This document shows positions 3,441-59,539 of a stretch of DNA of 64,000 nt, one piece after another (position 1 is the stretch's first letter; each line of letters begins with the position of its first letter). Location of the stretch: positions 186,001 through 250,000 of IMG/VR virus record IMGVR_UViG_3300024239_000011; one strand, 5' to 3'. Under the pieces are notes generated by a model. The model ran no database searches. It worked only from the letters and a program-made list of their open reading frames with translations, and had not been told where the DNA came from. The position numbers and the translations under genes are program-made.

Positions 3441-4329
3441 TGTCATCTACCTCGGTATAATTCTTGTCTTTCACATACACCCAGGTGTAACCAGCAGCCT
3501 CGACTAACTGTCGTTTAATGGCGGTTGTGCCTGGGTTATTTTTCTCCTGAAGTTTCTCTACATACCACGACTTGATCTCCACCACGTACTTTCCAAACAA
3601 GATAAAGTCAGCGATATAGAACACCCCAGCATCGGTAAACACAGGACCGTTCCCAATGTGATCATGGGTCAAACCGTGAATATCAAAACAGCGGGTGAGG
3701 AAATCAAGCTCATAACTGGATTGGTACAGCAGATCGGTGTCTCGAAATGGTTTTTGCTTAAAAACATTACGGTCTTTATCACTCAAAGTCTTTATCATAC
3801 TTTCAATCATTTTCTGCTTCGATTCTGGATTGAAAATAGGATTAAATTTTGAAGAGTGCATACGGTCAGATCGCCGTTTCTGATCATCCGACCCCTCATA
3901 CCGGGTATCGAAATAATCGCGAACCCGTTCGTTAAGATCAGTCGTCGCATGCTGTTTTTTCGCCTTTTCACTTAGGCGCTGACGTTCTGCATCAAACCGA
4001 TCAGAATTGCGAAAACGCCACCACCCTTCGCGTTGTTTATCCATAAAATTAGGATCATTTGCGCGCACTTGAAGGAATTCTTGACGTTTCCGTTCTTTAT
4101 CATCTTCTGTCCACATTTTCTTATATGCAGAACGCATTTCGTGAGAGATCAATGGCGCATCGGGAAACCGAGAAAGGTATTCGTCCCGTGTCGTTCCAAT
4201 CGATTTGAAATACTTGTTAGTCAGCCGCTTATACTGATTTCCAGTAAACAAACAGGTAATTACCGCTGGTGTATGATCTGGGTAAGTAATATCCACCGTT
4301 TTTGGGTCGGGACCGCCATAAATAGACAT
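3418..4329 (-). CDS. Free-standing homing-type endonuclease (C-terminal PD-(D/E)XK domain)
   Basis: YQSSYE...YIADF...VVEIKS nuclease motif with basic N-terminal DNA-binding region; antisense insertion between gp14 and gp15; ATG 4329 follows a GAGGTG RBS. Confidence 0.7.
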   Translation of the reverse strand: MSIYGGPDPKTVDITYPDHTPAVITCLFTGNQYKRLTNKYFKSIGTTRDEYLSRFPDAPLISHEMRSAYKKMWTEDDKERKRQEFLQVRANDPNFMDKQREGWWRFRNSDRFDAERQRLSEKAKKQHATTDLNERVRDYFDTRYEGSDDQKRRSDRMHSSKFNPIFNPESKQKMIESMIKTLSDKDRNVFKQKPFRDTDLLYQSSYELDFLTRCFDIHGLTHDHIGNGPVFTDAGVFYIADFILFGKYVVEIKSWYVEKLQEKNNPGTTAIKRQLVEAAGYTWVYVKDKNYTEVDDIIRHCVV

Positions 4330-4427
4330 ATAACACCTCACAGATTTCCGCTGTGAGTATTTATCTTTTGCTATTACGGGCAAATATGTGGTTTGGGTCC
4401 GGTGACCAAAATATGGAGGAAAATCAA

Positions 4428-5798
4428 GTGGCTAACCTTAATTTTTGGTATTCTGGGCAAATTAGGTCGTATATGCTTCAGTTCCTTCGCGTCTTCGCGG
4501 GGTTCCAGATCAAGACGGGGAAGGGCAAAGATGGCACCGAGACATTCATCAAGGTTCCAATTCGCTACTCGGATATGAGCCGTCAAGTTGGACATATTCT
4601 GCGTGAAAACAGCGAAAACATGATGTTATCGTGCCCGTTCATGACTGCGCATTTAACTGAAATTAGCCCTTCGGCGGAACGGCGCCAAACACCGAACCAT
4701 GTTAGTACGGTTCAAGTCACCGAACGCTATCATGACGATGGGTCAAACCAATATACCAACAAAATCGGTCAGGCATACTCAGTGGAACGTTTTATGCCGG
4801 TCCCCTACGATTTGGGCATGGAATTGAACATCTGGACATCGAACACTGACCAGAAACTTCAATTGCTTGAACAACTACTGGTTCTGTTCAACCCGTCCCT
4901 CGACCTTCAGACTTCGAACAACCCTGTGGATTGGTCCGCGTTGACCCTGATCGAGTTGGAATCAATCTCATGGTCGAGCCGCAGCATTCCGCAAGGTGCG
5001 TCGGAAGAAATCGACATAGCCACTTTGTCGTTCAAAATGCCGATATGGCTGAACCCACCGGCCAAGGTCAAGCGTCAGAAGATTATCCAACAGATCGTTA
5101 TGAACCTGATGGAGCATCCCACCATGCTAGACGCAGAACCGGGGGATATCCCGAACTGGACTGCGGACACCAAGCTCGATGCTCGGGTAGTGATCTCGCC
5201 AAATCAGTATCGCATTCGTCTCGAAGGCGATATCGTCACGCTTCTCGACTTCGCCGGAAACGAAAAGGGAGACGATGGTAAGGTATTCGAATGGTCCCCG
5301 CTTCTCGATCAGTATGGACAATACGAAGAAAGTGTATCGCAGATCGTTATTCGTACTTCGACCGACTACGATAACTTCGAGAACAATATCATTGGAACGA
5401 TCAAACTGATCCCGAACCAACCGAACAAGCTTCGGTGGACGGTCGATCCCGAAACGGTGCCGCGTGAAACCATCAAGAACATTCACGCGATCATCGACCC
5501 CCATAAGAACTACCCAGGAAAAGGTTTGCCCGCTCCATCGGTCGGTCAACGGTATCTGCTGCTTGATGAAATCGGACCCTGCGAAGCGTGGGGGAATATC
5601 GCCGCAAGTGCCAACGACATTATCGAATTCACCGGGGCACGCTGGGAGGTATATTTCAACTCAAACCAAATTCGAGAAACCCATATAGTCAAAAACTCAA
5701 ACCCAAACAGTCTAAAACACTACAAATGGAATGGACAGGAATGGGATGAATTAATCAACGGAGAATATTTCCCCGGCTCATGGCGCATCTTTCTGTAA
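4428..5798 (+). CDS. Tail completion/sheath stabiliser (T4 gp15-like) with C-terminal extension
   Basis: FWYSGQIRSY.LQF, VPIRY, MPVPYDL...IWTSNTDQKLQLLEQ.LVLFNPS; GTG start after GGAGG. Confidence 0.8.
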   Translation: MANLNFWYSGQIRSYMLQFLRVFAGFQIKTGKGKDGTETFIKVPIRYSDMSRQVGHILRENSENMMLSCPFMTAHLTEISPSAERRQTPNHVSTVQVTERYHDDGSNQYTNKIGQAYSVERFMPVPYDLGMELNIWTSNTDQKLQLLEQLLVLFNPSLDLQTSNNPVDWSALTLIELESISWSSRSIPQGASEEIDIATLSFKMPIWLNPPAKVKRQKIIQQIVMNLMEHPTMLDAEPGDIPNWTADTKLDARVVISPNQYRIRLEGDIVTLLDFAGNEKGDDGKVFEWSPLLDQYGQYEESVSQIVIRTSTDYDNFENNIIGTIKLIPNQPNKLRWTVDPETVPRETIKNIHAIIDPHKNYPGKGLPAPSVGQRYLLLDEIGPCEAWGNIAASANDIIEFTGARWEVYFNSNQIRETHIVKNSNPNSLKHYKWNGQEWDELINGEYFPGSWRIFL

Positions 5799-7761: not shown

Positions 7762-8979
7762 ATGACCTACATCACCAGTGACGAATTCCACGCCATCATT
7801 ACCCCTGCGACGGTTCGTATCAGCAAGCTGTTTGAGCAAGCTGGGTTCGACATCCGTATCGTCGGTGGAGCCGTGCGTGATTCGCTGCTCCGAGTGATGC
7901 CAAAGGATGTGGACTTCGCGACCAACGCGACCCCCGAAGAAATGATTCGGTTGATGGTTGCCGCTGATCTGTACGTGATCGGCGTCACGGAGTCCCTGCG
8001 GCGTGGTAAGACTCTGAATGAAATCATCGCGCGTATCGATGATATTCCGGGTATCCAGCATGGCACCGTGAGTGCGGTCATCAATGGTGAAACCTTCGAA
8101 ATCACCACGCTGCGATATGACATGGAAACGACCGGTCGGCATGCTAAAGTGGCATTTCATCGGTCGTTCCCGGAAGATGCCAAGCGTCGTGATTTCCGGT
8201 TCAATGCCATGTACGCCAGCATGGACGGGGAACTGCACGACTACGTTGGCGGTAAAGACGATCTCGACCAACAAGTTGTCCGGTTCGTTGGCGCCCCATC
8301 GCAGCGCATTAGAGAAGACTACCTGCGCATCTTGCGGTACTTCCGTTTTGCGGCGCGATTGGGGTTCTCCTTCGATGACGCGGCTGACGCGGCAATCGCA
8401 TACAACGTTGCGGGTCTGACGACCATCAGCGGCGAGCGCATCTGGGCGGAAATGTCCAAACTGTTCATGTATCGTGACCCGGTGAAATACCTGTTGCACA
8501 TGCATGCTCTGGGTGTAACCGAGGCAATCCAGTTGCCGGTGGATATGGATCAGGTGCGGGTGGTGTCCGAGTTCGCTACGTCGCCCGTGTCGGTACTGGC
8601 GGCATCGCTGCGTTCGGTTAGCGAGGTCGATACCCTGGCTGCCAGATGGAAGCTGAGCGGCGTTGAACGCAACTTGGCAGCATTCTTGGTGCAATATCGT
8701 GACGACCGGGTTGGGTTGCGGACTGCCCAGGATATGGTGGTCGATGGTGCCAACCACGACTTCGTTGCTGAACTACTGCGGGTCGGTGGACGTGTTGCCG
8801 AAGCGGATACGTTGGTTGGTTGGGTAACCCCCAAGTTCCCGGTTTCCGGCGCCGATCTGATGGCTTTGGGTATGAAACAAGGCAAAGAACTGGGTGATGC
8901 CTTGAAAAGCATGAAAGAACGCTGGAAACGCAGCGACTTTCAACTGTCCAAGGACGAACTGATGGCTGGCGGGGTTTAA
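7762..8979 (+). CDS. cca: Class II tRNA nucleotidyltransferase (CCA-adding enzyme)
   Basis: VGGAVRD.L....KDVDFAT, EITTLR, DAKRRDF..NA, RIREDYLRILRYFRF, ISGERIW; sigma70-like promoter TTGACA..TATATT at 7711-7738. Confidence 0.9.
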   Translation: MTYITSDEFHAIITPATVRISKLFEQAGFDIRIVGGAVRDSLLRVMPKDVDFATNATPEEMIRLMVAADLYVIGVTESLRRGKTLNEIIARIDDIPGIQHGTVSAVINGETFEITTLRYDMETTGRHAKVAFHRSFPEDAKRRDFRFNAMYASMDGELHDYVGGKDDLDQQVVRFVGAPSQRIREDYLRILRYFRFAARLGFSFDDAADAAIAYNVAGLTTISGERIWAEMSKLFMYRDPVKYLLHMHALGVTEAIQLPVDMDQVRVVSEFATSPVSVLAASLRSVSEVDTLAARWKLSGVERNLAAFLVQYRDDRVGLRTAQDMVVDGANHDFVAELLRVGGRVAEADTLVGWVTPKFPVSGADLMALGMKQGKELGDALKSMKERWKRSDFQLSKDELMAGGV

Positions 8980-8994
8980 CCCGCCAGCTTTTTT
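8965..8994 (+). terminator. Rho-independent terminator
   Basis: GCTGGCGGG-loop-CCCGCCAGC followed by T6. Confidence 0.85.
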
Positions 8995-9030
8995 ATTGGT
9001 CTACGTGTCAATATGGCGTAGGTTGCACCA

Positions 9031-9243
9031 ATGAAATGCAATCACTGTAACCTTGATTCGTCCGATTCCGGCTTCCGTATGAATGTACGGGATGGTGGAC
9101 CGATGTATTGGCGCCGTACCTCTGAAGGCATCATGCAGGCGTTTTGCTCCCCACATTGCAGCACCTCGCAACAACTCACCGACCGGGGTGAAGAAGTTCC
9201 TTCGTGGATTGCCGAACAACGAAAAATGTATGCTGCTAAATAA
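9031..9243 (+). CDS. Small Zn-finger-like protein
   Basis: CNHC...FCSPHC. Confidence 0.5.
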   Translation: MKCNHCNLDSSDSGFRMNVRDGGPMYWRRTSEGIMQAFCSPHCSTSQQLTDRGEEVPSWIAEQRKMYAAK

Positions 9244-51735: not shown

Positions 51736-51805
51736 CTCGGGTTAAAACCCAATAAAATCCGATTATAAATACTGATATCTAAAGTATTTAGTAAGGGATT
51801 ATAGT

Positions 51806-52648
51806 ATGACAGAAATGCCATCAACCAACCCACTGCGCAAATTCTTCCGCGAACCGGGTATATATATCAAGCTCCCAACCATGGGGTACTTCAACCCCGG
51901 TGAGATTGATTTCACGGCATCAGGGGAAATCCCGATCTACCCGATGACGGCTTACGATGAGCTTCTTCTGAAAAACCCTGATGCATTGCTCAATGGTGAT
52001 GCAATCGAACGCATCATCACATCCTGTGTTCCTGATATTAGAAACCCACGAAATCTTTGCACACCAGATGTTGATACTATTCTTTTGGCAATTCGCGCAT
52101 CATCATATGGCGACATCATCGAATACCAATCAAATTGCCCCAAGTGTAACAAAGAAAACACTTATGCAGCATCCATCCGTTTTGCAGTAGAAACCATTGC
52201 ATTCCATGAACCGGCATATCCAGTGGAAGTGGGTAAGAATGTATTAGTGCATATTCGTCCACGGTCGTTTGCAACCGCGACGAAAGCGGCGATCAAAGCG
52301 TTTGAACAGCAAAAACTTCTTCAGGAAATCACCAAAGCAACTGAAATAGATGATCTTGAGAAAAACGCCATCTTCCGTGACAGCTTTGAGAAAATCTCAA
52401 ACCTGAACTTCGAACTGATAGCGGATTCGATTATTTCCGTTACTATCCCGCAAGGCACGGTGGTCGAACCGGAATTCATCAAAGAATGGCTAGTGAATAC
52501 TGACACTCGTTCCGTTAAAAAAGTGGAAAAGGAAATTTTACGAGTAACTGAGATCGGTGTGAACAAAAAACACGCGGTTTCCTGTCCTAATTGTCAGCAC
52601 GAATGGGAGTCGAATATTATCTTCGATCCATCCTATTTTTTCGGATGA
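51806..52648 (+). CDS. Baseplate hub assembly protein (T4 gp26/gp51-like)
   Basis: NPL..FFR.P.IYI.LP, PMTA.DE..LK.PDALLNG, D.D.IL.AIR.SSYG, CPKC and CPNC, ends DPSYFFG. Confidence 0.85.
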   Translation: MTEMPSTNPLRKFFREPGIYIKLPTMGYFNPGEIDFTASGEIPIYPMTAYDELLLKNPDALLNGDAIERIITSCVPDIRNPRNLCTPDVDTILLAIRASSYGDIIEYQSNCPKCNKENTYAASIRFAVETIAFHEPAYPVEVGKNVLVHIRPRSFATATKAAIKAFEQQKLLQEITKATEIDDLEKNAIFRDSFEKISNLNFELIADSIISVTIPQGTVVEPEFIKEWLVNTDTRSVKKVEKEILRVTEIGVNKKHAVSCPNCQHEWESNIIFDPSYFFG

Positions 52649-52869
52649 GGCTCTTGGCAGCAACGCCGGAAGAAATTCAGCATATCCTCCATGAAATGAC
52701 TGAGGAGTCGAGAGCCATAACAAAGTCAATAGCAGACATCGTAACTTACTCAAATGGTGGAGTAGGTTGGTCTGAAGCATGGTCAATGTCTCCGGAATCC
52801 CGCAAAACCATAGCGAAATCCATTGGAGAACTGTTTGAATTTAAGAAAAAAACTGGATTACCATTTTAA
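52645..52869 (+). CDS. Small baseplate/tail chaperone partner (possible -1 frameshift extension of the previous gene)
   Basis: GGV.WSEAW.MSP..R pattern; ATGA overlap; T TTT TTC at 52636-52642. Confidence 0.6.
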   Translation: MRLLAATPEEIQHILHEMTEESRAITKSIADIVTYSNGGVGWSEAWSMSPESRKTIAKSIGELFEFKKKTGLPF

Positions 52870-52936
52870 TTGGGTTTGACACCCTCTACTATCCATGATA
52901 GTATGATATAGTGATCGTTGTTCAGTAGAGGGTGTC

Positions 52937-53377
52937 ATGAGCAACAAACCCGCAATCGGTATTTTCGTCTGGATGGCGTTTGGCACCAAACTCATCAAAA
53001 GCCGATTGTTCTGGGTCGCTATGTGGGCGATCTGGCTGGTATTGTTCCCATGGGCTACCTCACCAAACCCAAACCAAGGTCCAGTACAGATTGTATGGGT
53101 GATCATATCGATCATCATTCTGCCCACCGTGTTCTATATCATTCAAGCGATTCTCTCGAACATCATCGTGAAAATTCTACTTTGGTTATGCGTAGGTTTC
53201 TGTTGGTTTTGGGCAGTAGTGTTTTGGTACAAAGGCTTCGATCCTATTCCGCCTTTGTTCCTTTCGTTAATTCCGTTGGCATTTATTGCCTGGAAGTTCA
53301 CTCTTATTGTGATTTCTGGTGGAATTGCTACCTTAGCACTCGGAACGCGCTGGTCTTTCAGAAAAACTGAAGACTAA
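52937..53377 (+). CDS. Multi-pass membrane protein
   Basis: About four hydrophobic segments; TTGACA..TATGAT-like promoter upstream. Confidence 0.65.
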   Translation: MSNKPAIGIFVWMAFGTKLIKSRLFWVAMWAIWLVLFPWATSPNPNQGPVQIVWVIISIIILPTVFYIIQAILSNIIVKILLWLCVGFCWFWAVVFWYKGFDPIPPLFLSLIPLAFIAWKFTLIVISGGIATLALGTRWSFRKTED

Positions 53378-53384
53378 ACAACTT

Positions 53385-54255
53385 TTAGTTATTGCACCAG
53401 ATCGAGGTACCACCTTCCCTCCCATAAAAGAAGGAAGATGGTAACACGGATTTGCACCGAGTCTCAGTACCCGAACATCGAGGCTAGTGCTTTAAAACAG
53501 CACGGTAGGCGGGTCGTCGTACTCCTACCATCCCCTCTCACCTTCACTCCGACCGGTGCCGATCAGGGACTTGTCGGTAATTCCTGACCGGGTGCCTGTT
53601 GTGGTTCATCACATATCAGGCTCTTTGCACCAAATAACCTAAGGTAATTGGATTTACATAGCTACACTCAGTAGCCGTGTCTATTTCAGTTCGATTGAAC
53701 TGGGGTCCGCTTGGCGTGCCTTGCATTCCCTATCCCGCCGACTGCACTCGTGGTCTTGTTGATCCCACAAGCGGATTTCCAGCGGTTGTGCTACACTCAC
53801 TCAATGTCTTCGTCGGCGGCTGTGTAGCCTATTGTCCGAAGCCAGGGGTACTGCGGGATCACAGTGGTTGAAATCCCTGTGTAGGTATATAATGCTGCGA
53901 GCAGCTACGCTAAATATGTGCATAGCTGTTCGCAGCTATATGACACCTTCCGGTGTCCTGCTTAACTGCCCAGACGGAAACCCTCACCATGCCCGGTGGG
54001 GGTTTCTTTATGTCTGGACATAACCGAGATAGGGTAAACCTATTGAGCCTGTGGACGTGCTGAGTAAAGAGCGGTGTTAACGGAGCCAAGAACGGGATGG
54101 GATTATATCCCTGCGCCGAACCGCAGAAGTCCACAGCTTGGAAATTATATGCGGAATTTTTACCTAACCACATAAGATTTTACCTGAAAGAATCGAAAAG
54201 ACTCGTGCAGGTTGCCGTACACGAGTCTTAACGAATCTGTAGTGGTAGCCGCAAT
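53385..54255. ncRNA. Large structured non-coding region (candidate ncRNA)
   Basis: ~870 nt with no credible ORF and more than 10 visible helices, several with G-U-compatible substitutions. Confidence 0.6.
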
Positions 54256-54262
54256 ATAAAAA

Positions 54263-54505
54263 TTAGGTATGCCTGAGGATTTCCTTGCGGATGATCTTCG
54301 CATCCACTTCAGGTCGTGACGCGATTTTCAGGCTTACCGACGAACCGTGGCACGTACATTCGGTGCCAGTGAATGACACAAATCCAGCCGCGATAACATG
54401 ACCGGGCATAGCATTTGCGATCAACGCATGTTCGATGTAGTTTGGGAAAACGATGGCAGCATCATTTAGACCATTGTCCATAATGACGTATTTGGCGTCT
54501 TTCAT
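54263..54505 (-). CDS. Hypothetical protein
   Basis: KYV....IVFP..I.H...AAGFV...C.G.S.SL.I.SR pattern. Confidence 0.6.
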   Translation of the reverse strand: MKDAKYVIMDNGLNDAAIVFPNYIEHALIANAMPGHVIAAGFVSFTGTECTCHGSSVSLKIASRPEVDAKIIRKEILRHT

Positions 54506-56599: not shown

Positions 56600-57394
56600 T
56601 TAGATTACGGAAGATCGTGCGGTTCGTGCTGACTGATGATGGGATGCCCCGCCGTAGGGGTTTGCCATTTCCATGTACTTCAGAAGGTATTGCTCGGGTG
56701 CTACACGGAAATCGATCATCCATGGGGTGTCACCGCGTGGCATCTTTCCGGGTTTCTGGTGCAGGATGGCGATTTTCCACGTGGTGTCTTTAGCAATATC
56801 AACACCAGGGACAACAATCCGGTTCTGGGTGTACGGGGTTTTGATTAGCGACCGGCGCTGTGCTTCATCGTATTCGATTTCCAGCAGACGACGCGGAATT
56901 TGGATGTGGCGCTTGCGCGTTTCATCCAGACTTTCCAAGAACTCATATGAACCGCTACCCTTGACCTGAATGCGGGCAGAGTTGCCATAGAATTTCAGGA
57001 TTTCCGCAACCAGCGCCCGACGCACTTCGCGATGCACTGACATCGGGATGGAGATTACGCTTTCGACCAGCATGAGGATTTGCTTGTCGGTGGCGAAAAG
57101 CCCGTCCCGATGCGTCTGAAGGCTCTCGGGAAGCTCGACCTTCTCCTTGGTGCCAGTCACTACCTTCCGCACGTCAAAGCCCTCTTGGATCGCGGTACCG
57201 AGGGTGTTGATGGTCTGATCCGTGATGGTAGCCAAGAGCTTGGGATCGCGACGGAGCATCCGCATCAATTCCGTGTTCAGGGCGTTGTACAGGACAAGTT
57301 CCTGACCCATAATTGTGCGCACACGGGTCTTATCATGGTATGCAAGCTCTACCGTGTATTGCTGATTTGTTGTTTTCTTATCAATTCTGGTCAT
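56600..57394 (-). CDS. Hypothetical protein, possibly resembling the N-terminal half of TnpB
   Basis: AGGAG RBS; minus TAAATA at ~57459-57464; see finding. Confidence 0.6.
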   Translation of the reverse strand: MTRIDKKTTNQQYTVELAYHDKTRVRTIMGQELVLYNALNTELMRMLRRDPKLLATITDQTINTLGTAIQEGFDVRKVVTGTKEKVELPESLQTHRDGLFATDKQILMLVESVISIPMSVHREVRRALVAEILKFYGNSARIQVKGSGSYEFLESLDETRKRHIQIPRRLLEIEYDEAQRRSLIKTPYTQNRIVVPGVDIAKDTTWKIAILHQKPGKMPRGDTPWMIDFRVAPEQYLLKYMEMANPYGGASHHQSARTARSSVI

Positions 57395-57478
57395 AGTAAC
57401 TCCTTTGTACCCGAAACTCGGATAGAAACATCGCTGATAAATATTTTCAGGATCGTTCTATTTATTTTTCGAGGCAGG

Positions 57479-58180
57479 ATGCGGTACCAAGAACTATTCG
57501 AATGGAGTACGGATGTCCTAGCGTCAGTTAACAATAAGCCGGGATTTCAGGTATGGTTTGGGGAGTCGAAGGTCGTTGATCGCGACGGTTTACCGCTCCC
57601 TGTATTTCACTACACCTCTGCACAGTTCGAGGTTTCGAATTTTCACCCATTCAGTCACTTCGGGTCGGACAAAGCCGCCATGGCGATTTGGCAGCATCGC
57701 TACGACTTGGGGGACAAGCCGGGTCGGATACGACAGAAGACGCTTAATCGGATTACCCAGAACCCAGATGCTTTTTATTGGAAGAATGATGGTCGTCATG
57801 GGCGGGATGATGTCCAACATCGCACCATCCCGGTGTTCTTGAGGATCGAGAAGCCGTTACGAATCGAAGATCACGGTGACGCTCACCGCCCTGAAGTTTT
57901 CCTACACATACTGAGGGATTTGGGGCTTTATGAGCCGGATTTCGATGAACTACACCGTTTAGCAAAGAAGCGGCGTTTACCGGATAATTTTGGTACTGGT
58001 TTGAGCCGTCTGCTCCACGTGTATTCTGATGAGAAAATGAACTCCATTATTCTCGATGTGATGCGCAATGCCGGGTACGATGGGTTCGTTTACAAGAATC
58101 TTAAAGAACACAAGGGTAGTCGGAGTTGGATTATTCTTGACCCATACCAAGTCCGCTCGGTGTTTGAATTCCTTGGATAA
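57479..58180 (+). CDS. ADP-ribosyltransferase-like protein (ART-PolyVal-like)
   Basis: F..WFGESKVVD.DG.PL.VFH.T, HFG, PVFLRI.KPL, GYDG..Y.N..E, QVRS; TAAATA promoter at 57438. Confidence 0.65.
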   Translation: MRYQELFEWSTDVLASVNNKPGFQVWFGESKVVDRDGLPLPVFHYTSAQFEVSNFHPFSHFGSDKAAMAIWQHRYDLGDKPGRIRQKTLNRITQNPDAFYWKNDGRHGRDDVQHRTIPVFLRIEKPLRIEDHGDAHRPEVFLHILRDLGLYEPDFDELHRLAKKRRLPDNFGTGLSRLLHVYSDEKMNSIILDVMRNAGYDGFVYKNLKEHKGSRSWIILDPYQVRSVFEFLG

Positions 58181-58248
58181 TAGGTGATTTGGGACATCCA
58201 AATGGTTCTGAGAGATAAATACTCACATAATAAGTGAGTGGAACCAAA

Positions 58249-59052
58249 ATGGATTATGAACGCATATATGACAATTTGATGGTTAGGGCGTCGAGCCGTG
58301 TATTAGATGGTTATGTTGAAAAACATCATATCATTCCACGATGTGTCGGTGGTTTAGATGATAATACGAACTACGCAATATTGACTCCAGAAGAGCATTA
58401 TCTGGCGCATCTTTTGTTGGTGAAAATGCCGCGTTATAAAGGGCATTCCAAATACAATAAGCTGGTATATGCCGCCAACATGCTCACCGTTGGGGGAAGT
58501 CGTAATAACAAATCTTATGGATGGTTAAAACGCAAGTTGGGCGCGTTGGTGCGCGAAAACAATTTAGGTAGAAAGCAAAGTGAAGAAACTATTGAGAAAC
58601 GGGTAAGTAAAACGCGCGGACAGAAACGAACTGACGAAACCCGTCAACGCATTCGTGATGCGTTGACTGGGCGAACACGACCCGAATTTTCGGAAGAATG
58701 GATCGCAAAACTACGTCAGGCGAATACCGGTGAAAACAACAATATGTTCGGTAAGAAACATAGTGATGAAAGTCGTCGCAAGATGTCCGAAAGTAAAAAG
58801 GGCAAACATCTATGGACTGATGATCAAAAACGTGAAATTGGAGAACGCATGCGCGGTCGTGTTGATACCGAAGAAACAAAGAGGAAGAAGTCTACTGCGA
58901 TTAAGTCATCATGGGAAGATAATGATGAACGCAAAAAACAGTTAAGCGAAAAAATGCGCGGTCGTGTTCTTTCAGAAGAAACCAAAAAGAAATTATCTGA
59001 TGCTGCTAAGCGGCGTTGGCAGAAAATAAAGGAAAACGCCAATGAATTCTAA
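58249..59052 (+). CDS. HNH homing endonuclease with NUMOD3 repeats
   Basis: EKHHIIPRC.GG.D...N...LT.EEH.LAHLLL; repeated (H/Q)SEET..K.S units. Confidence 0.9.
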   Translation: MDYERIYDNLMVRASSRVLDGYVEKHHIIPRCVGGLDDNTNYAILTPEEHYLAHLLLVKMPRYKGHSKYNKLVYAANMLTVGGSRNNKSYGWLKRKLGALVRENNLGRKQSEETIEKRVSKTRGQKRTDETRQRIRDALTGRTRPEFSEEWIAKLRQANTGENNNMFGKKHSDESRRKMSESKKGKHLWTDDQKREIGERMRGRVDTEETKRKKSTAIKSSWEDNDERKKQLSEKMRGRVLSEETKKKLSDAAKRRWQKIKENANEF

Positions 59053-59539
59053 AAACAAAGGTAATACGTTCGAGCGTAAGATTGCCAATTTGTTTTCGAA
59101 ACGGTTTGCTGAGAAAACTGGTATTGCCCAAGCGTTCAGACGTAATATCGATTCTGGTAGTTTTTTTGGCGGTTCAAATCAAAAACGAACGGAAACGCAT
59201 AATACTGAGAACGCAGTATTTGGTGATATTAATTGCCCGAGTAATTTTAACTATTCGCTTGAATGCAAGCATTACAAAGCTGGTCCCTCATTTGCCAATC
59301 TCATGAAGCAAAATTGTAAGGATTGGGATGGGTGGATTAGTCAAGCCGAACAGGATAGTAAAAATTCTGGAAAGAAAATGGCTATCATCGTCAAATATAA
59401 CAATGTTGAGGAAGTAGTCATTCTGTCGGAACCGGTCCCGGATTGCTACAATATGCCGTACAAGGCTTATTTTGTGGCGCCGTTGGTAGATTTTCTTAAA
59501 ATGGACGACAGTGTGTTCTTTCCAGAAACGGTGGATTGA
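59042..59539 (+). CDS. Holliday junction resolvase-like PD-(D/E)XK nuclease
   Basis: SK.KG..FER.IA, F.R...SG, GDI, ECK.YK, W..QA. Confidence 0.75.
   Translation: MNSKNKGNTFERKIANLFSKRFAEKTGIAQAFRRNIDSGSFFGGSNQKRTETHNTENAVFGDINCPSNFNYSLECKHYKAGPSFANLMKQNCKDWDGWISQAEQDSKNSGKKMAIIVKYNNVEEVVILSEPVPDCYNMPYKAYFVAPLVDFLKMDDSVFFPETVD

What the first reader, a model, noticed from the sequence alone, without database searches (positions are those of the whole stretch)
53385..54255. ~870-nt densely structured non-coding region, candidate large phage RNA
Seen: the longest ORF-free stretch in a gene-dense window, full of helices. Examples: 53408-53421/53430-53443 (14 bp, perfect on minus with two G-U); 53550-53580; TCCGCTTG/CAAGCGGA (~53707/53768); GCTACAC/GTGTAGC (~53790/53822); 53894-53936 (14 bp, CTAAATA in loop); GACACC-GGAA-GGTGTC (53942-53957, GNRA loop on minus); 53970-54018 nested stems; CTGTGGAC/GTCCACAG (~54049/54129) enclosing smaller hairpins; 54198-54229 (10 bp). 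TTGCACC recurs at 53392, 53452 and 53625. I cannot match it to tmRNA, RNase P or group I/II intron cores. Wobble pairs favour minus in the left half and are mixed in the right half. Inference: a large multi-domain ncRNA in the GOLLD/ROOL size range, or a structured replication or packaging locus.
Basis: partly seen in the sequence, partly recalled or inferred. Interest (0 to 1): 0.8.

Follow-up and report, generated by a model that had tools for sequence, protein, structure and literature searches.

The report
New structured RNA in jumbo phage
The gene-free stretch is real and holds a roughly 460-base, many-hairpin non-coding RNA on the minus strand that matches no known RNA family, is better conserved than the neighbouring genes in a distant relative, and lies downstream of a gene for a nuclease-less TnpB/Cas12f-like protein that may be its partner.

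Summary
Window 53378-54262 is an 885-nt gap between convergent genes and folds far better than shuffles (z -10.2 on minus, -4.95 on plus). The gap is not one unit.

The left part, 53393-53849 (minus strand), is a conserved RNA core. It is 72% identical to a gap in a metagenomic relative (L009) whose hub protein is only 53% identical and whose flanking small genes are unrelated. It shows no codon periodicity. Across 13 helices, 15 pairs changed on both sides and stayed paired, and 3 broke. The pairwise consensus fold has z -7.1 on minus against -3.1 on plus. Rfam gives no hit.

The right part, 53850-54262, is lineage-specific. It holds a terminator-like hairpin, three near-perfect hairpins, a helix that is degraded in a 96.5% identical relative, and an 87-codon ORF of uncertain status.

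A 264-aa gene 2.3 kb upstream on the same strand is predicted with high confidence to be a RuvC-less TnpB/Cas12f-like WED+REC protein. In other lineages its homologues are followed directly by 0.45-1.16 kb without called genes.

Best reading: a new structured ncRNA family, possibly the RNA partner of that protein. The function is not proven. Only two diverged sequences exist.

The parts
53393..53849 (-). Conserved RNA core (A-type), about 460 nt, 13 helices joined by invariant single-stranded linkers
   Evidence: It is 71.9% identical over 474 columns to L009 4296-4761 (+). This is the highest nucleotide identity of all segments shared by the two loci. Mismatches by phase are 42/41/45. The pairwise alifold z is -7.1.
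53735..53785 (-). P0 enclosing P1: a 9-bp hairpin with an 11-nt loop whose last ten bases, AUCAACAAGA, are invariant (the first loop base is G in the window and U in L009)
   Evidence: Independent MFE folds of the window, L007 and L009 all give P1. P0 is the enclosing helix in the L009 fold. The window and L007 folds pair GUCGGCGG with the upstream CCGCCGAC instead, a pairing that has an A.G mismatch in L009, so P0 is a curated choice. There are one-sided changes GU to GC and GU to AU, and one break in L009.
53703..53730 (-). P2: hairpin of equal length in both lineages with a different inner sequence
   Evidence: Separate MFE folds of the window and L009 both give a hairpin here, although nearly all inner bases differ.
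53687..53702 (-). P3 hairpin
   Evidence: Four of 5 pairs changed on both sides between the window and L009. L007 extends the helix by an insertion.
53660..53676 (-). P4 hairpin
   Evidence: Two compensatory pairs.
53630..53651 (-). P5 hairpin: CCAA/UUGG base kept, inner part variable in length
53594..53621 (-). P6 hairpin
   Evidence: Two compensatory pairs, GC to AU and CG to UA.
53559..53591 (-).
   Evidence: Four consecutive pairs changed on both sides and all stayed paired.
53487..53558 (-). P8, P9 and P10 hairpins
   Evidence: The P9 and P10 stems are invariant. In L007, P10 gains a G-C pair through an insertion plus a substitution. P8 has one break in L009.
53406..53459 (-).
   Evidence: P11 has 1 compensatory pair. 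P12 has 2 compensatory and 4 one-sided changes. The L007 changes A-U to G-U and U-G to C-G keep pairing.
53889..54018 (-). Three near-perfect hairpins (53889-53941, 53942-53957, 53970-54018), lineage-specific
   Evidence: The local fold z is -8.2. They are identical in L007 and absent from L009. No copies occur elsewhere in the window.
54049..54129 (-). Variable domain with a hypervariable 16-nt patch at its 3' side (54049-54068)
   Evidence: About 17 of the 31 window/L007 differences within the gap fall here. The 8-bp closing helix loses 3 pairs in L007. The patch has no match elsewhere.
53910..54173 (-). 87-codon ORF of uncertain status
   Evidence: It is intact in L007 with 8 amino-acid changes. 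Five of the 8 substitutions outside the patch are synonymous. It has no homologues and no family hits. It was not called as a gene on L007.
54189..54238 (-). Terminator-like hairpin with a U-rich tail, just after the 80-aa gene
   Evidence: Arms of 19 nt, 84% complementary. It lies in a window with z -5.1. The simple terminator scan did not flag it.
56600..57394 (-). 264-aa gene: RuvC-less TnpB/Cas12f-like WED+REC protein, the candidate RNA partner
   Evidence: The AF2 model has pLDDT 93.2 and pTM 0.86. The top 23 Foldseek PDB hits are all Cas12f/n/k, TnpB or Fanzor. The family has 195 clusters, and the listed members are mostly 200-345 aa.
59042..59539 (+). PDDEXK_15 / RusA-like resolvase gene, conserved divergent neighbour of the WED+REC gene
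   Evidence: Pfam family as listed. phrog_244 at E 3e-20.

Best explanation
Shown: window 53393-53849, read on the minus strand, encodes a conserved non-coding RNA of about 460 nt. It is built of about 13 hairpins joined by invariant single-stranded linkers (for example GGGAUAGG, GAAAUAGAC, AAAUCCAA, UAGCCUCGAUG, ACCUCGAUCU). It belongs to no described RNA family.

Inferred: this pattern of variable but compensated stems with frozen junctions is what is seen in RNAs that act through a defined three-dimensional fold, rather than through simple antisense pairing or as DNA.

Most likely mechanism (inferred, about one chance in three): it is the RNA subunit of a ribonucleoprotein with the phage's 264-aa TnpB/Cas12f-like protein. 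That protein keeps the RNA-binding WED and REC modules and has no RuvC nuclease domain. Its gene lies upstream on the same strand. On this reading the RNP would bind nucleic acid under RNA guidance or scaffolding within the replication/recombination gene block, which holds RNase H, gp46/47 and a PD-(D/E)XK resolvase.

The right-hand 400 nt of the gap are not part of the conserved RNA. They hold a terminator-like hairpin, lineage-specific hairpins and perhaps a small gene.
For: Non-coding and conserved:
- The core is 71.9% identical to L009, against 68-69% for the portal gene, 59.7% for the hub gene and 57.6% for the WED+REC gene.
- The adjacent small genes are not homologous.
- Mismatch phases are 42/41/45, against 83/47/199 for portal and 99/69/179 for hub. 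Indel lengths are mostly not multiples of three.

Structure:
- Of 83 curated pairs, 59 are unchanged, 6 changed on one side and stayed paired, 15 changed on both sides and stayed paired, and 3 are broken.
- The alifold energy is -107.5 against -68.3 +/- 5.5 for column shuffles (z -7.1). It finds 13 compensatory pairs against 7.5 +/- 2.9.
- Window/L007 micro-differences inside the core all keep or extend helices.

Strand:
- z is -10.2 against -4.95, -7.1 against -3.1, and -4.5 against -2.9 for L009.
- 15 G-U pairs sit in the curated helices.

Partner hypothesis:
- The AF2 model has pLDDT 93, and the top 23 PDB fold matches are all Cas12f, Cas12n, Cas12k, TnpB or Fanzor.
- Homologues in L010-12, L063/65, L064, L066 and L067 are followed directly, on the same strand, by 446-1158 nt without called genes.
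- In the window and in L009 the RNA is the only conserved non-coding segment. It lies 2.3 and 1.3 kb downstream on the same strand, with unrelated genes in between.
- L052/53 lack both the gap and the gene.
Against: - Only two diverged sequences exist (the window with L007, and L009), so covariation rests on one comparison. 3 of 60 shuffled alignments reached as many compensatory pairs.
- No transcript evidence is available, and neither promoter nor 3' end could be defined.

Against the partner link:
- The RNA is not adjacent to the gene in the window.
- At about 460 nt it is far larger than the omega or guide RNAs I know of (about 100-300 nt, from memory).
- The gene-free gaps next to the homologues in other lineages share no detectable sequence or covariance-model similarity with this RNA.
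- Phage Phosso keeps a gap homologous to the L010 type, and tblastn finds no WED+REC gene in any deposited phage record, Phosso included.
- A distant family member (L068) is followed directly by a gene.
- The fold matches have modest E-values (7e-4 to 5e-2) and TM scores of about 0.3-0.55.
Confidence: 0.4

Rival explanations
1. It is an autonomous large 'ornate' RNA in the manner of GOLLD or ROOL. On this reading it is a stand-alone structured RNA that acts on its own, as a scaffold, assembly or ribozyme, with no link to the TnpB-like protein. The shared neighbourhood only reflects conserved gene order in this phage clade.
For: All the evidence for a conserved folded RNA applies. The RNA is flanked by unrelated genes in the two lineages, as an independent gene would be. 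Phosso has an L010-type gap, and no WED+REC gene was found by tblastn. The gaps beside the homologues are not homologous to this RNA.
Against: No covariance-model match to GOLLD, ROOL, OLE, raiA or HEARO. There are no tRNA genes nearby, unlike many GOLLD/ROOL loci as I recall them. A TnpB-like WED+REC protein needs some RNA partner, and no other conserved non-coding segment is shared by the two loci.
Confidence: 0.3
2. It is a replication-origin transcript: a structured primer or R-loop RNA, like ColE1 RNA II or the T4 oriF/oriG transcripts. It would be processed by the nearby RNase H and would mark an origin in the replication/recombination block.
For: The neighbourhood holds gp46/47-like genes and a resolvase, and relatives have an RNase H gene directly beside the syntenic gap. 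The cumulative GC skew of the window reaches its minimum in the 52-54 kb bin.
Against: There are no iterons, direct-repeat arrays or AT-rich unwinding element. The region is more G+C-rich (50-52%) than its left flank (42-45%). The genes converge here rather than diverge. The skew rise comes mostly from one bin, and only 64 kb of a 543-kb genome could be seen. Frozen junctions with compensated stems point to a folded RNA, not a hybrid-forming primer.
Confidence: 0.12
3. It is a cis-acting 3' untranslated element. On this reading the 87-codon ORF (53910-54173) is a real gene. The hairpins and conserved core are its 3' UTR, or that of the operon, serving as stabiliser, processing site or terminator array at a convergent junction.
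For: The ORF is intact in L007, and 5 of the 8 substitutions outside a hypervariable patch are synonymous. AGG lies 9-10 nt before the AUG. A terminator-like hairpin and other hairpins lie at a convergent gene junction.
Against: The ORF has no homologues or family hits and was not called on L007. Its 3' half runs through near-perfect palindromes. The ORF is absent from L009 while the core is conserved there behind a different gene. About 460 nt with invariant junctions is much more than a stabiliser or terminator needs.
Confidence: 0.1
4. It is a decayed gene, a DNA-level site (pac or recombination site) or chance structure.
For: No experimental evidence for a transcript exists. The family is very small.
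Against: There is no codon periodicity and no protein family hit for any ORF piece. Stops of all kinds occur in all frames. Conservation is above that of the coding genes. Compensatory changes and G-U asymmetry favour one strand.
Confidence: 0.04

Closest known systems
GOLLD and ROOL (large ornate RNAs of bacteria and phages)
   Same: A size of several hundred nucleotides, many hairpins, a phage setting, no coding capacity and an unknown biochemical role.
   Different: No sequence or structure match (cmscan at gathering score and at E up to 10). No tRNA genes nearby. The family is very small: three contigs.
TnpB omega RNA / Cas12f guide RNA / TldR guide RNA
   Same: A structured RNA encoded downstream of, and on the same strand as, a gene whose product has the TnpB/Cas12f WED+REC fold. 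Conservation stops abruptly at the 3' end of the scaffold (53393), after which the relatives diverge.
   Different: The protein has no RuvC domain at all. The RNA lies 2.3 kb away with five or more genes between. The scaffold is 2-4 times longer than known omega RNAs (sizes from memory). No guide or target could be identified.
ColE1 RNA II / T4 origin transcripts
   Same: A structured RNA of roughly 500 nt near replication and recombination genes, with RNase H beside the syntenic gap in relatives.
   Different: No unwinding element or iterons. The conservation pattern is that of a tertiary fold.
Group I and group II introns of T4-like phages
   Same: A structured RNA of several hundred nucleotides in a T4-like phage, with homing-endonuclease genes nearby (NUMOD3 gene 58234-59052).
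   Different: No covariance-model match. It does not interrupt any gene, because the flanking genes end on opposite strands. The one domain-V-like AGC, in P6, is AAU in L009.

Membership tests
GOLLD, ROOL, OLE, HEARO, raiA and every other Rfam 15 family | Match to the family covariance model at or near its gathering score | tested here: not met
   The whole window gave 0 matches at gathering score. The region 53200-54450 at E up to 10 gave only chance-level miRNA or leader hits of at most 21 bits. The relatives' loci also gave 0.
Large ornate ncRNA (operational class) | More than 400 nt, non-coding, many conserved helices supported by covariation, conserved junctions | tested here: met
   The support rests on one diverged pair of sequences.
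Group I intron | Interrupts a host gene or RNA, and matches the conserved P3-P8/P4-P6 core | tested here: not met
   The flanking genes converge and both end with stops. There is no model match.
Group II intron | Domain V with a conserved AGC triad and a match to the D5-D6 model | tested here: not met
   No model match. The only AGC-bearing hairpin (P6) reads AAU in L009.
TnpB/Cas12f-type omega or guide RNA | Encoded at or directly after the 3' end of the effector gene, on the same strand | tested here: inconclusive
   The strand is the same, but the RNA lies 2.3 kb (window) or 1.3 kb (L009) downstream with unrelated genes between. Direct adjacency of a gene-free gap is seen only in other lineages, whose gaps are not homologous to this RNA.
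TnpB/Cas12f-type omega or guide RNA | Partner protein is a TnpB/Cas12 with WED, REC and RuvC domains | tested here: not met
   The fold matches the WED+REC part only. The protein has 264 aa and the listed family members are mostly 200-345 aa, with no RuvC domain.
TnpB/Cas12f-type omega or guide RNA | Variable guide segment next to the scaffold that matches a target | not testable with these tools
   The sequence diverges right after the scaffold. The host and any targets are unknown. The hypervariable patch has no match.
Replication origin / primer RNA (ColE1 RNA II, T4 oriF/oriG type) | AT-rich unwinding element, iterons or initiator boxes, and a skew switch | tested here: inconclusive
   No repeats or AT-rich tract. 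The local cumulative-skew minimum falls in the 52-54 kb bin, but only 64 kb of 543 kb was seen.
Protein-coding gene (intact, recoded or decayed) | Open frame, third-position bias of substitutions, or similarity to a protein family | tested here: not met
   For the core. The 87-codon ORF in the right half remains undecided.

The most novel reading that the evidence does not exclude
The RNA is the unusually large guide or scaffold RNA of a new kind of RNA-guided system in jumbo phages. In this system a TnpB-derived protein has been reduced to its RNA- and DNA-binding WED+REC modules. It is always encoded back-to-back with a PD-(D/E)XK/RusA-like nuclease that would supply cleavage in trans. The system would act in phage replication, recombination or competition between phages.
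Probability: 0.15. Interest if true: 0.92.

Novelty: new variant of a known kind. Interest (0 to 1): 0.68.

Why it matters
Large, intricately folded RNAs with no known function are rare. When studied they have turned out to be ribozymes, RNP scaffolds or self-assembling cages. This would add a family from jumbo (543-kb) T4-like phages, a group in which non-coding RNA is almost unexplored.

The same search turned up a family of about 195 clusters of RuvC-less TnpB/Cas12f-like proteins, conserved next to a PD-(D/E)XK resolvase gene. In the ten loci examined they sit in the replication/recombination block of T4-like jumbo-phage contigs. If the RNA and this protein work together, this would be a new offshoot of the TnpB-to-Cas12 lineage, and possibly a compact RNA-guided DNA binder.

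Tried and rejected
Searches for a known family or further homologues:
- Rfam at gathering score and at permissive thresholds, on the window and on seven relatives' loci, found nothing. ARAGORN found no tRNA or tmRNA.
- blastn of the region against 50,697 phage records found no match.
- Exact-pattern scans were run with conserved blocks: IMG/VR four times, JGI metagenomes once, GTDB genomes once. They returned only the window's own contig plus chance hits, which nhmmer rejected.
- A protein search with the 264-aa gene returned only the query's own cluster (100% identical). tblastn of its L010 homologue against deposited phages found none.

Tests for homology between this RNA and the gene-free gaps of other lineages (L010/Phosso, L063/L064, L066, L067, L054, Atu_ph07):
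- blastn, nhmmer profiles, shared k-mer order and a covariance model of the 5' domain were all negative.

Other ideas tested:
- Recoded gene: rejected.
- Decayed gene: rejected for the core.
- Repeat or mobile element: no copies in the window.
- Sigma-70 promoter and intrinsic terminator scans gave nothing above shuffles.
- Hypervariable patch as a guide: no target found.
- Defence-system and NCBIfam models for neighbouring proteins found nothing relevant.

Full report
WHAT IS THERE. The window is part of IMG/VR contig IMGVR_UViG_3300024239_000011 (543,035 bp). Window position plus 186,000 gives the contig position. It is a T4-like jumbo phage: it has a gp20-type portal, a gp26-type baseplate hub and a T4-type late promoter TATAAATA just before the hub gene. 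Its nearest cultured relatives, Agrobacterium phage Atu_ph07 and Sinorhizobium phage Phosso, share only about 40% hub identity. The flagged stretch is the 885-nt gap 53378-54262. It lies between a 146-aa gene on the plus strand and an 80-aa gene (phrog_3988) on the minus strand, so the genes converge on it. It is the largest gap in the window.

IS IT MORE THAN CHANCE? Yes.
- The minus strand folds at -342.1 kcal/mol against -271.9 +/- 6.9 for shuffles (z -10.2). The plus strand gives z -4.95.
- Scanning in 150-nt windows shows that the extreme value comes largely from three near-perfect hairpins at 53889-54018 (z -8.2) and from a terminator-like hairpin at 54189-54238 (z -5.1). The remaining windows give z from -0.5 to -3.5.

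NOT CODING AND NOT A KNOWN RNA.
- All six frames contain several TAA, TAG and TGA codons.
- None of the small ORFs hits Pfam or PHROGs.
- Rfam 15 gives no match at gathering score. At E up to 10 it gives only noise, both in the window and in seven loci of relatives.
- There are no tRNA or tmRNA genes.
- blastn against 50,697 phage records finds nothing.

RELATIVES. Hub-protein homologues led to contigs that carry the same neighbourhood.
- L007 (ENA) is a 96.5% identical copy of the gap.
- L009 (ENA, hub 53% identical) has an 823-nt gene-free gap. Positions 4296-4761 (+) of L009 match window 53849-53393 (minus) at 71.9% identity over 474 columns.
- This is the best-conserved nucleotide segment shared by the two loci. 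It exceeds the portal gene (68-69%), the hub gene (59.7%) and the 264-aa gene (57.6%).
- The small genes that flank the RNA are unrelated in the two phages.
- Substitutions show no three-base periodicity (42/41/45 by phase). The portal (83/47/199) and hub (99/69/179) controls do. Indel lengths are 1, 1, 8, 1, 1, 1, 1, 2 and 3.
- Exact-pattern scans of IMG/VR, JGI metagenomes and GTDB genomes with conserved blocks returned no further member. The family is therefore very rare in current data.

STRUCTURE AND STRAND.
- Independent MFE folds of the window, L007 and L009 give the same row of local hairpins.
- I curated 13 helices, P0-P12 (coordinates), holding 83 base pairs. Between the window and L009, 59 pairs are unchanged, 6 changed on one side and stayed paired, 15 changed on both sides and stayed paired, and 3 are broken.
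- P7 has four consecutive compensated pairs and P3 has four of five. P4 and P6 have two each.
- P2 and P5 keep a hairpin of similar size although nearly all inner bases differ.
- The few window/L007 differences inside the core also keep or extend helices. P10 gains a G-C pair by an insertion plus a substitution. P3 is lengthened. In P12, A-U becomes G-U and U-G becomes C-G.
- The RNAalifold energy of the window/L009 pair is -107.5 against -68.3 +/- 5.5 for column-shuffled alignments (z -7.1). It finds 13 compensatory pairs against 7.5 +/- 2.9, and 3 of 60 shuffles reach 13.
- The opposite strand gives z -3.1. L009 alone also prefers the equivalent strand: -264.8 (z -4.5) against -243.7 (z -2.9).
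- Fifteen G-U pairs in the curated helices would be A-C mismatches on the other strand.
- Between the helices lie invariant single-stranded blocks of 7-15 nt, among them GAGUGAGUGUAGCAC, AUCAACAAGA, GGGAUAGG, GAAAUAGAC, AAAUCCAA, GUGAGAG, UAGCCUCGAUG and ACCUCGAUCU.
- Frozen junctions with compensated stems are the signature of an RNA that works through a tertiary fold. This last point is inference.

ANATOMY OF THE GAP, read 5' to 3' on the minus strand.
1. 54238-54189: a terminator-like hairpin with a U-rich tail, after the 80-aa gene.
2. 54173-53910: an 87-codon ORF.
3. 54129-54049, inside that ORF: a variable domain. Its closing helix is degraded in L007 (3 of 8 pairs lost). Its 3' side is a 16-nt patch with 9 differences, set in otherwise almost identical sequence.
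4. 54018-53889: three near-perfect hairpins, identical in L007 and absent from L009.
5. 53849-53393: the conserved core.
6. About 15 nt further on, the stop codon of the convergent gene.

The ORF is intact in L007, and five of the eight substitutions outside the patch are synonymous. However, it has no homologues, was not called on L007, and runs through the palindromes. Its status is open. In L009 the extra sequence lies 3' of the core instead of 5'.

TCCGCTTG/CAAGCGGA and GCTACAC/GTGTAGC fail in L009. CTGTGGAC/GTCCACAG fails in L007.

CONTEXT: A TnpB-LIKE GENE.
- The 264-aa gene at 56600-57394 (minus) is conserved in L009 (48%) and in L010 (29%, E 1e-29).
- Pfam, PHROGs, NCBIfam, PADLOC and PDB sequence searches say nothing useful about it.
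- A profile search finds 195 clusters at 50% identity. Nearly all listed members are 200-345 aa.
- An AlphaFold2 model built on 50 sequences has pLDDT 93.2 and pTM 0.86. Its layout is a strand, a long helical insert and then a beta-barrel.
- Foldseek against the PDB returns, as its top 23 hits, only Cas12f, Cas12n, Cas12k, Cas12o/p, TnpB and Fanzor complexes. Probabilities are 0.82-1.0 and E-values 7e-4 to 5e-2. ISDra2 TnpB with its RuvC domain unresolved gives TMt 0.55.
- The protein is therefore a WED+REC module of the TnpB/Cas12f type without a RuvC nuclease domain.
- It is encoded back-to-back with a PDDEXK_15 / RusA-like resolvase gene in L009, L010, L063, L064, L066, L067 and L069. In the window, insertions separate the two genes.
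- In L010-12, L063/65 and L064 the gene is followed directly, on the same strand, by 950-1158 nt without genes and then by RNase H. In L066 and L067, 446 and 703 gene-free nt run to the contig end.
- L052/53 lack both the gene and the gap.

Against a simple link:
- Those gaps fall into sequence groups (L010/Phosso; L063/L064) that share nothing detectable with the window's RNA. blastn, nhmmer, motif order and a covariance model of the 5' domain are all negative.
- Their own structural signal is weak (alifold z -2.3 and -1.35).
- Phosso keeps an L010-type gap, and tblastn finds no such gene in any deposited phage record.
- The distant member L068 is followed directly by a gene.

HOW IT MOST LIKELY WORKS.
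- Shown: it is a conserved, folded, non-coding element whose helices read correctly on the minus strand.
- Inferred: it is transcribed from the minus strand, either from its own promoter or as the 3' part of the upstream operon, and acts as a folded RNA.
- My preferred mechanism, at roughly one chance in three, is an RNP with the WED+REC protein. Proteins of this fold are known only as RNA-guided effectors whose RNA is encoded just downstream on the same strand (established for TnpB, Cas12f and TldR; from my knowledge and the titles).
- This RNA is the only conserved non-coding segment in the two loci. The unrelated genes between it and the protein gene look like later insertions.
- The main rival, about equally likely, is an autonomous ornate RNA unrelated to that protein.
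- A primer or origin RNA (about 0.12) fits the RNase H / gp46/47 neighbourhood and the local skew minimum. It lacks iterons and an AT-rich element.
- A cis-acting 3' UTR element (about 0.1) and a decayed gene, DNA site or chance structure (under 0.05) are less likely.

COMPARISON AND NOVELTY. It resembles GOLLD and ROOL in size and style but is not a member of either. It resembles omega RNAs in position and strand, but it fails adjacency and size, and its candidate partner lacks RuvC. It is not an intron. I rate it a new family within the known class of large structured RNAs of unknown function. A minority reading would make it part of a new RNA-guided system.

LIMITS. There are only two diverged sequences, no expression data, undefined ends and an unknown host. 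The partner hypothesis rests on synteny and a predicted fold.

Noticed in passing
window 56600-57394 (-) and 59042-59539 (+); L009 896-2862; L010 12603-14053; L063, L064, L066, L067, L069: A family of about 195 clusters of mostly 200-345-aa proteins has a confidently predicted TnpB/Cas12f WED+REC fold and no RuvC domain. Its gene is encoded back-to-back with a PDDEXK_15 / RusA-like resolvase gene in the loci listed here. No deposited phage genome has a tblastn match.
   Followed up: partly
L010 11445-12602; L063 4337-5286; L064 4374-5400; L006 (Phosso) 8230-9243; L054 10856-11665: Relatives carry 0.8-1.16 kb gene-free gaps at the syntenic place, beside RNase H. These gaps have conserved cores of their own: L063/L064 are 74% identical over 363 nt, and L010/Phosso 62% over 175 nt. 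The cores are not alignable to the window's RNA or to each other.
   Followed up: partly
L010 12555-12574 (-), L064 5360-5379 (-), L066 1549-1567 (+): The gaps after the WED+REC gene in L010, L064 and L066 begin with a GC hairpin followed by AGATCGRA..GATGTAGC. L063 has only the GATGTAGC part. CTACTTTATA is shared further on. These could be a promoter or the 5' end of an RNA.
   Followed up: no
window 54049-54068 (-): A 16-nt patch differs at 9 positions between the window and L007, although the surrounding gap is almost identical. It changes five consecutive codons of the 87-codon ORF. No match was found elsewhere in the window or in IMG/VR.
   Followed up: partly
window 53910-54173 (-), protein P0244: The database lists this 87-aa ORF on two contigs, the longer of 869,618 bp. 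That exceeds the 543-kb IMG/VR contig, so another assembly of this phage, or of a larger relative, may exist.
   Followed up: no
window 51764-51771 (+), also 1087, 28150, 30049, 47109: Exact T4-type late promoter boxes (TATAAATA) occur 5 times against 1.1 expected. One lies 35 nt before the hub gene start.
   Followed up: no
L009 9226-12888: The portal gene of the relative L009 is interrupted by an intein (Intein_splicing inside Portal_T4, product 1220 aa).
   Followed up: no
window 57080-58180 (+) and 58234-59052 (+): An ORF with weak ART-PolyVal (ADP-ribosyltransferase) similarity overlaps the 5' end of the 264-aa gene on the opposite strand. A NUMOD3 / group-I-intron-type homing endonuclease gene sits between the WED+REC gene and the resolvase gene.
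   Followed up: no
window 52001-54000: The cumulative GC skew of the 64-kb window reaches its minimum in this bin. Genes at 54-57 kb are on the minus strand yet show positive skew.
   Followed up: no
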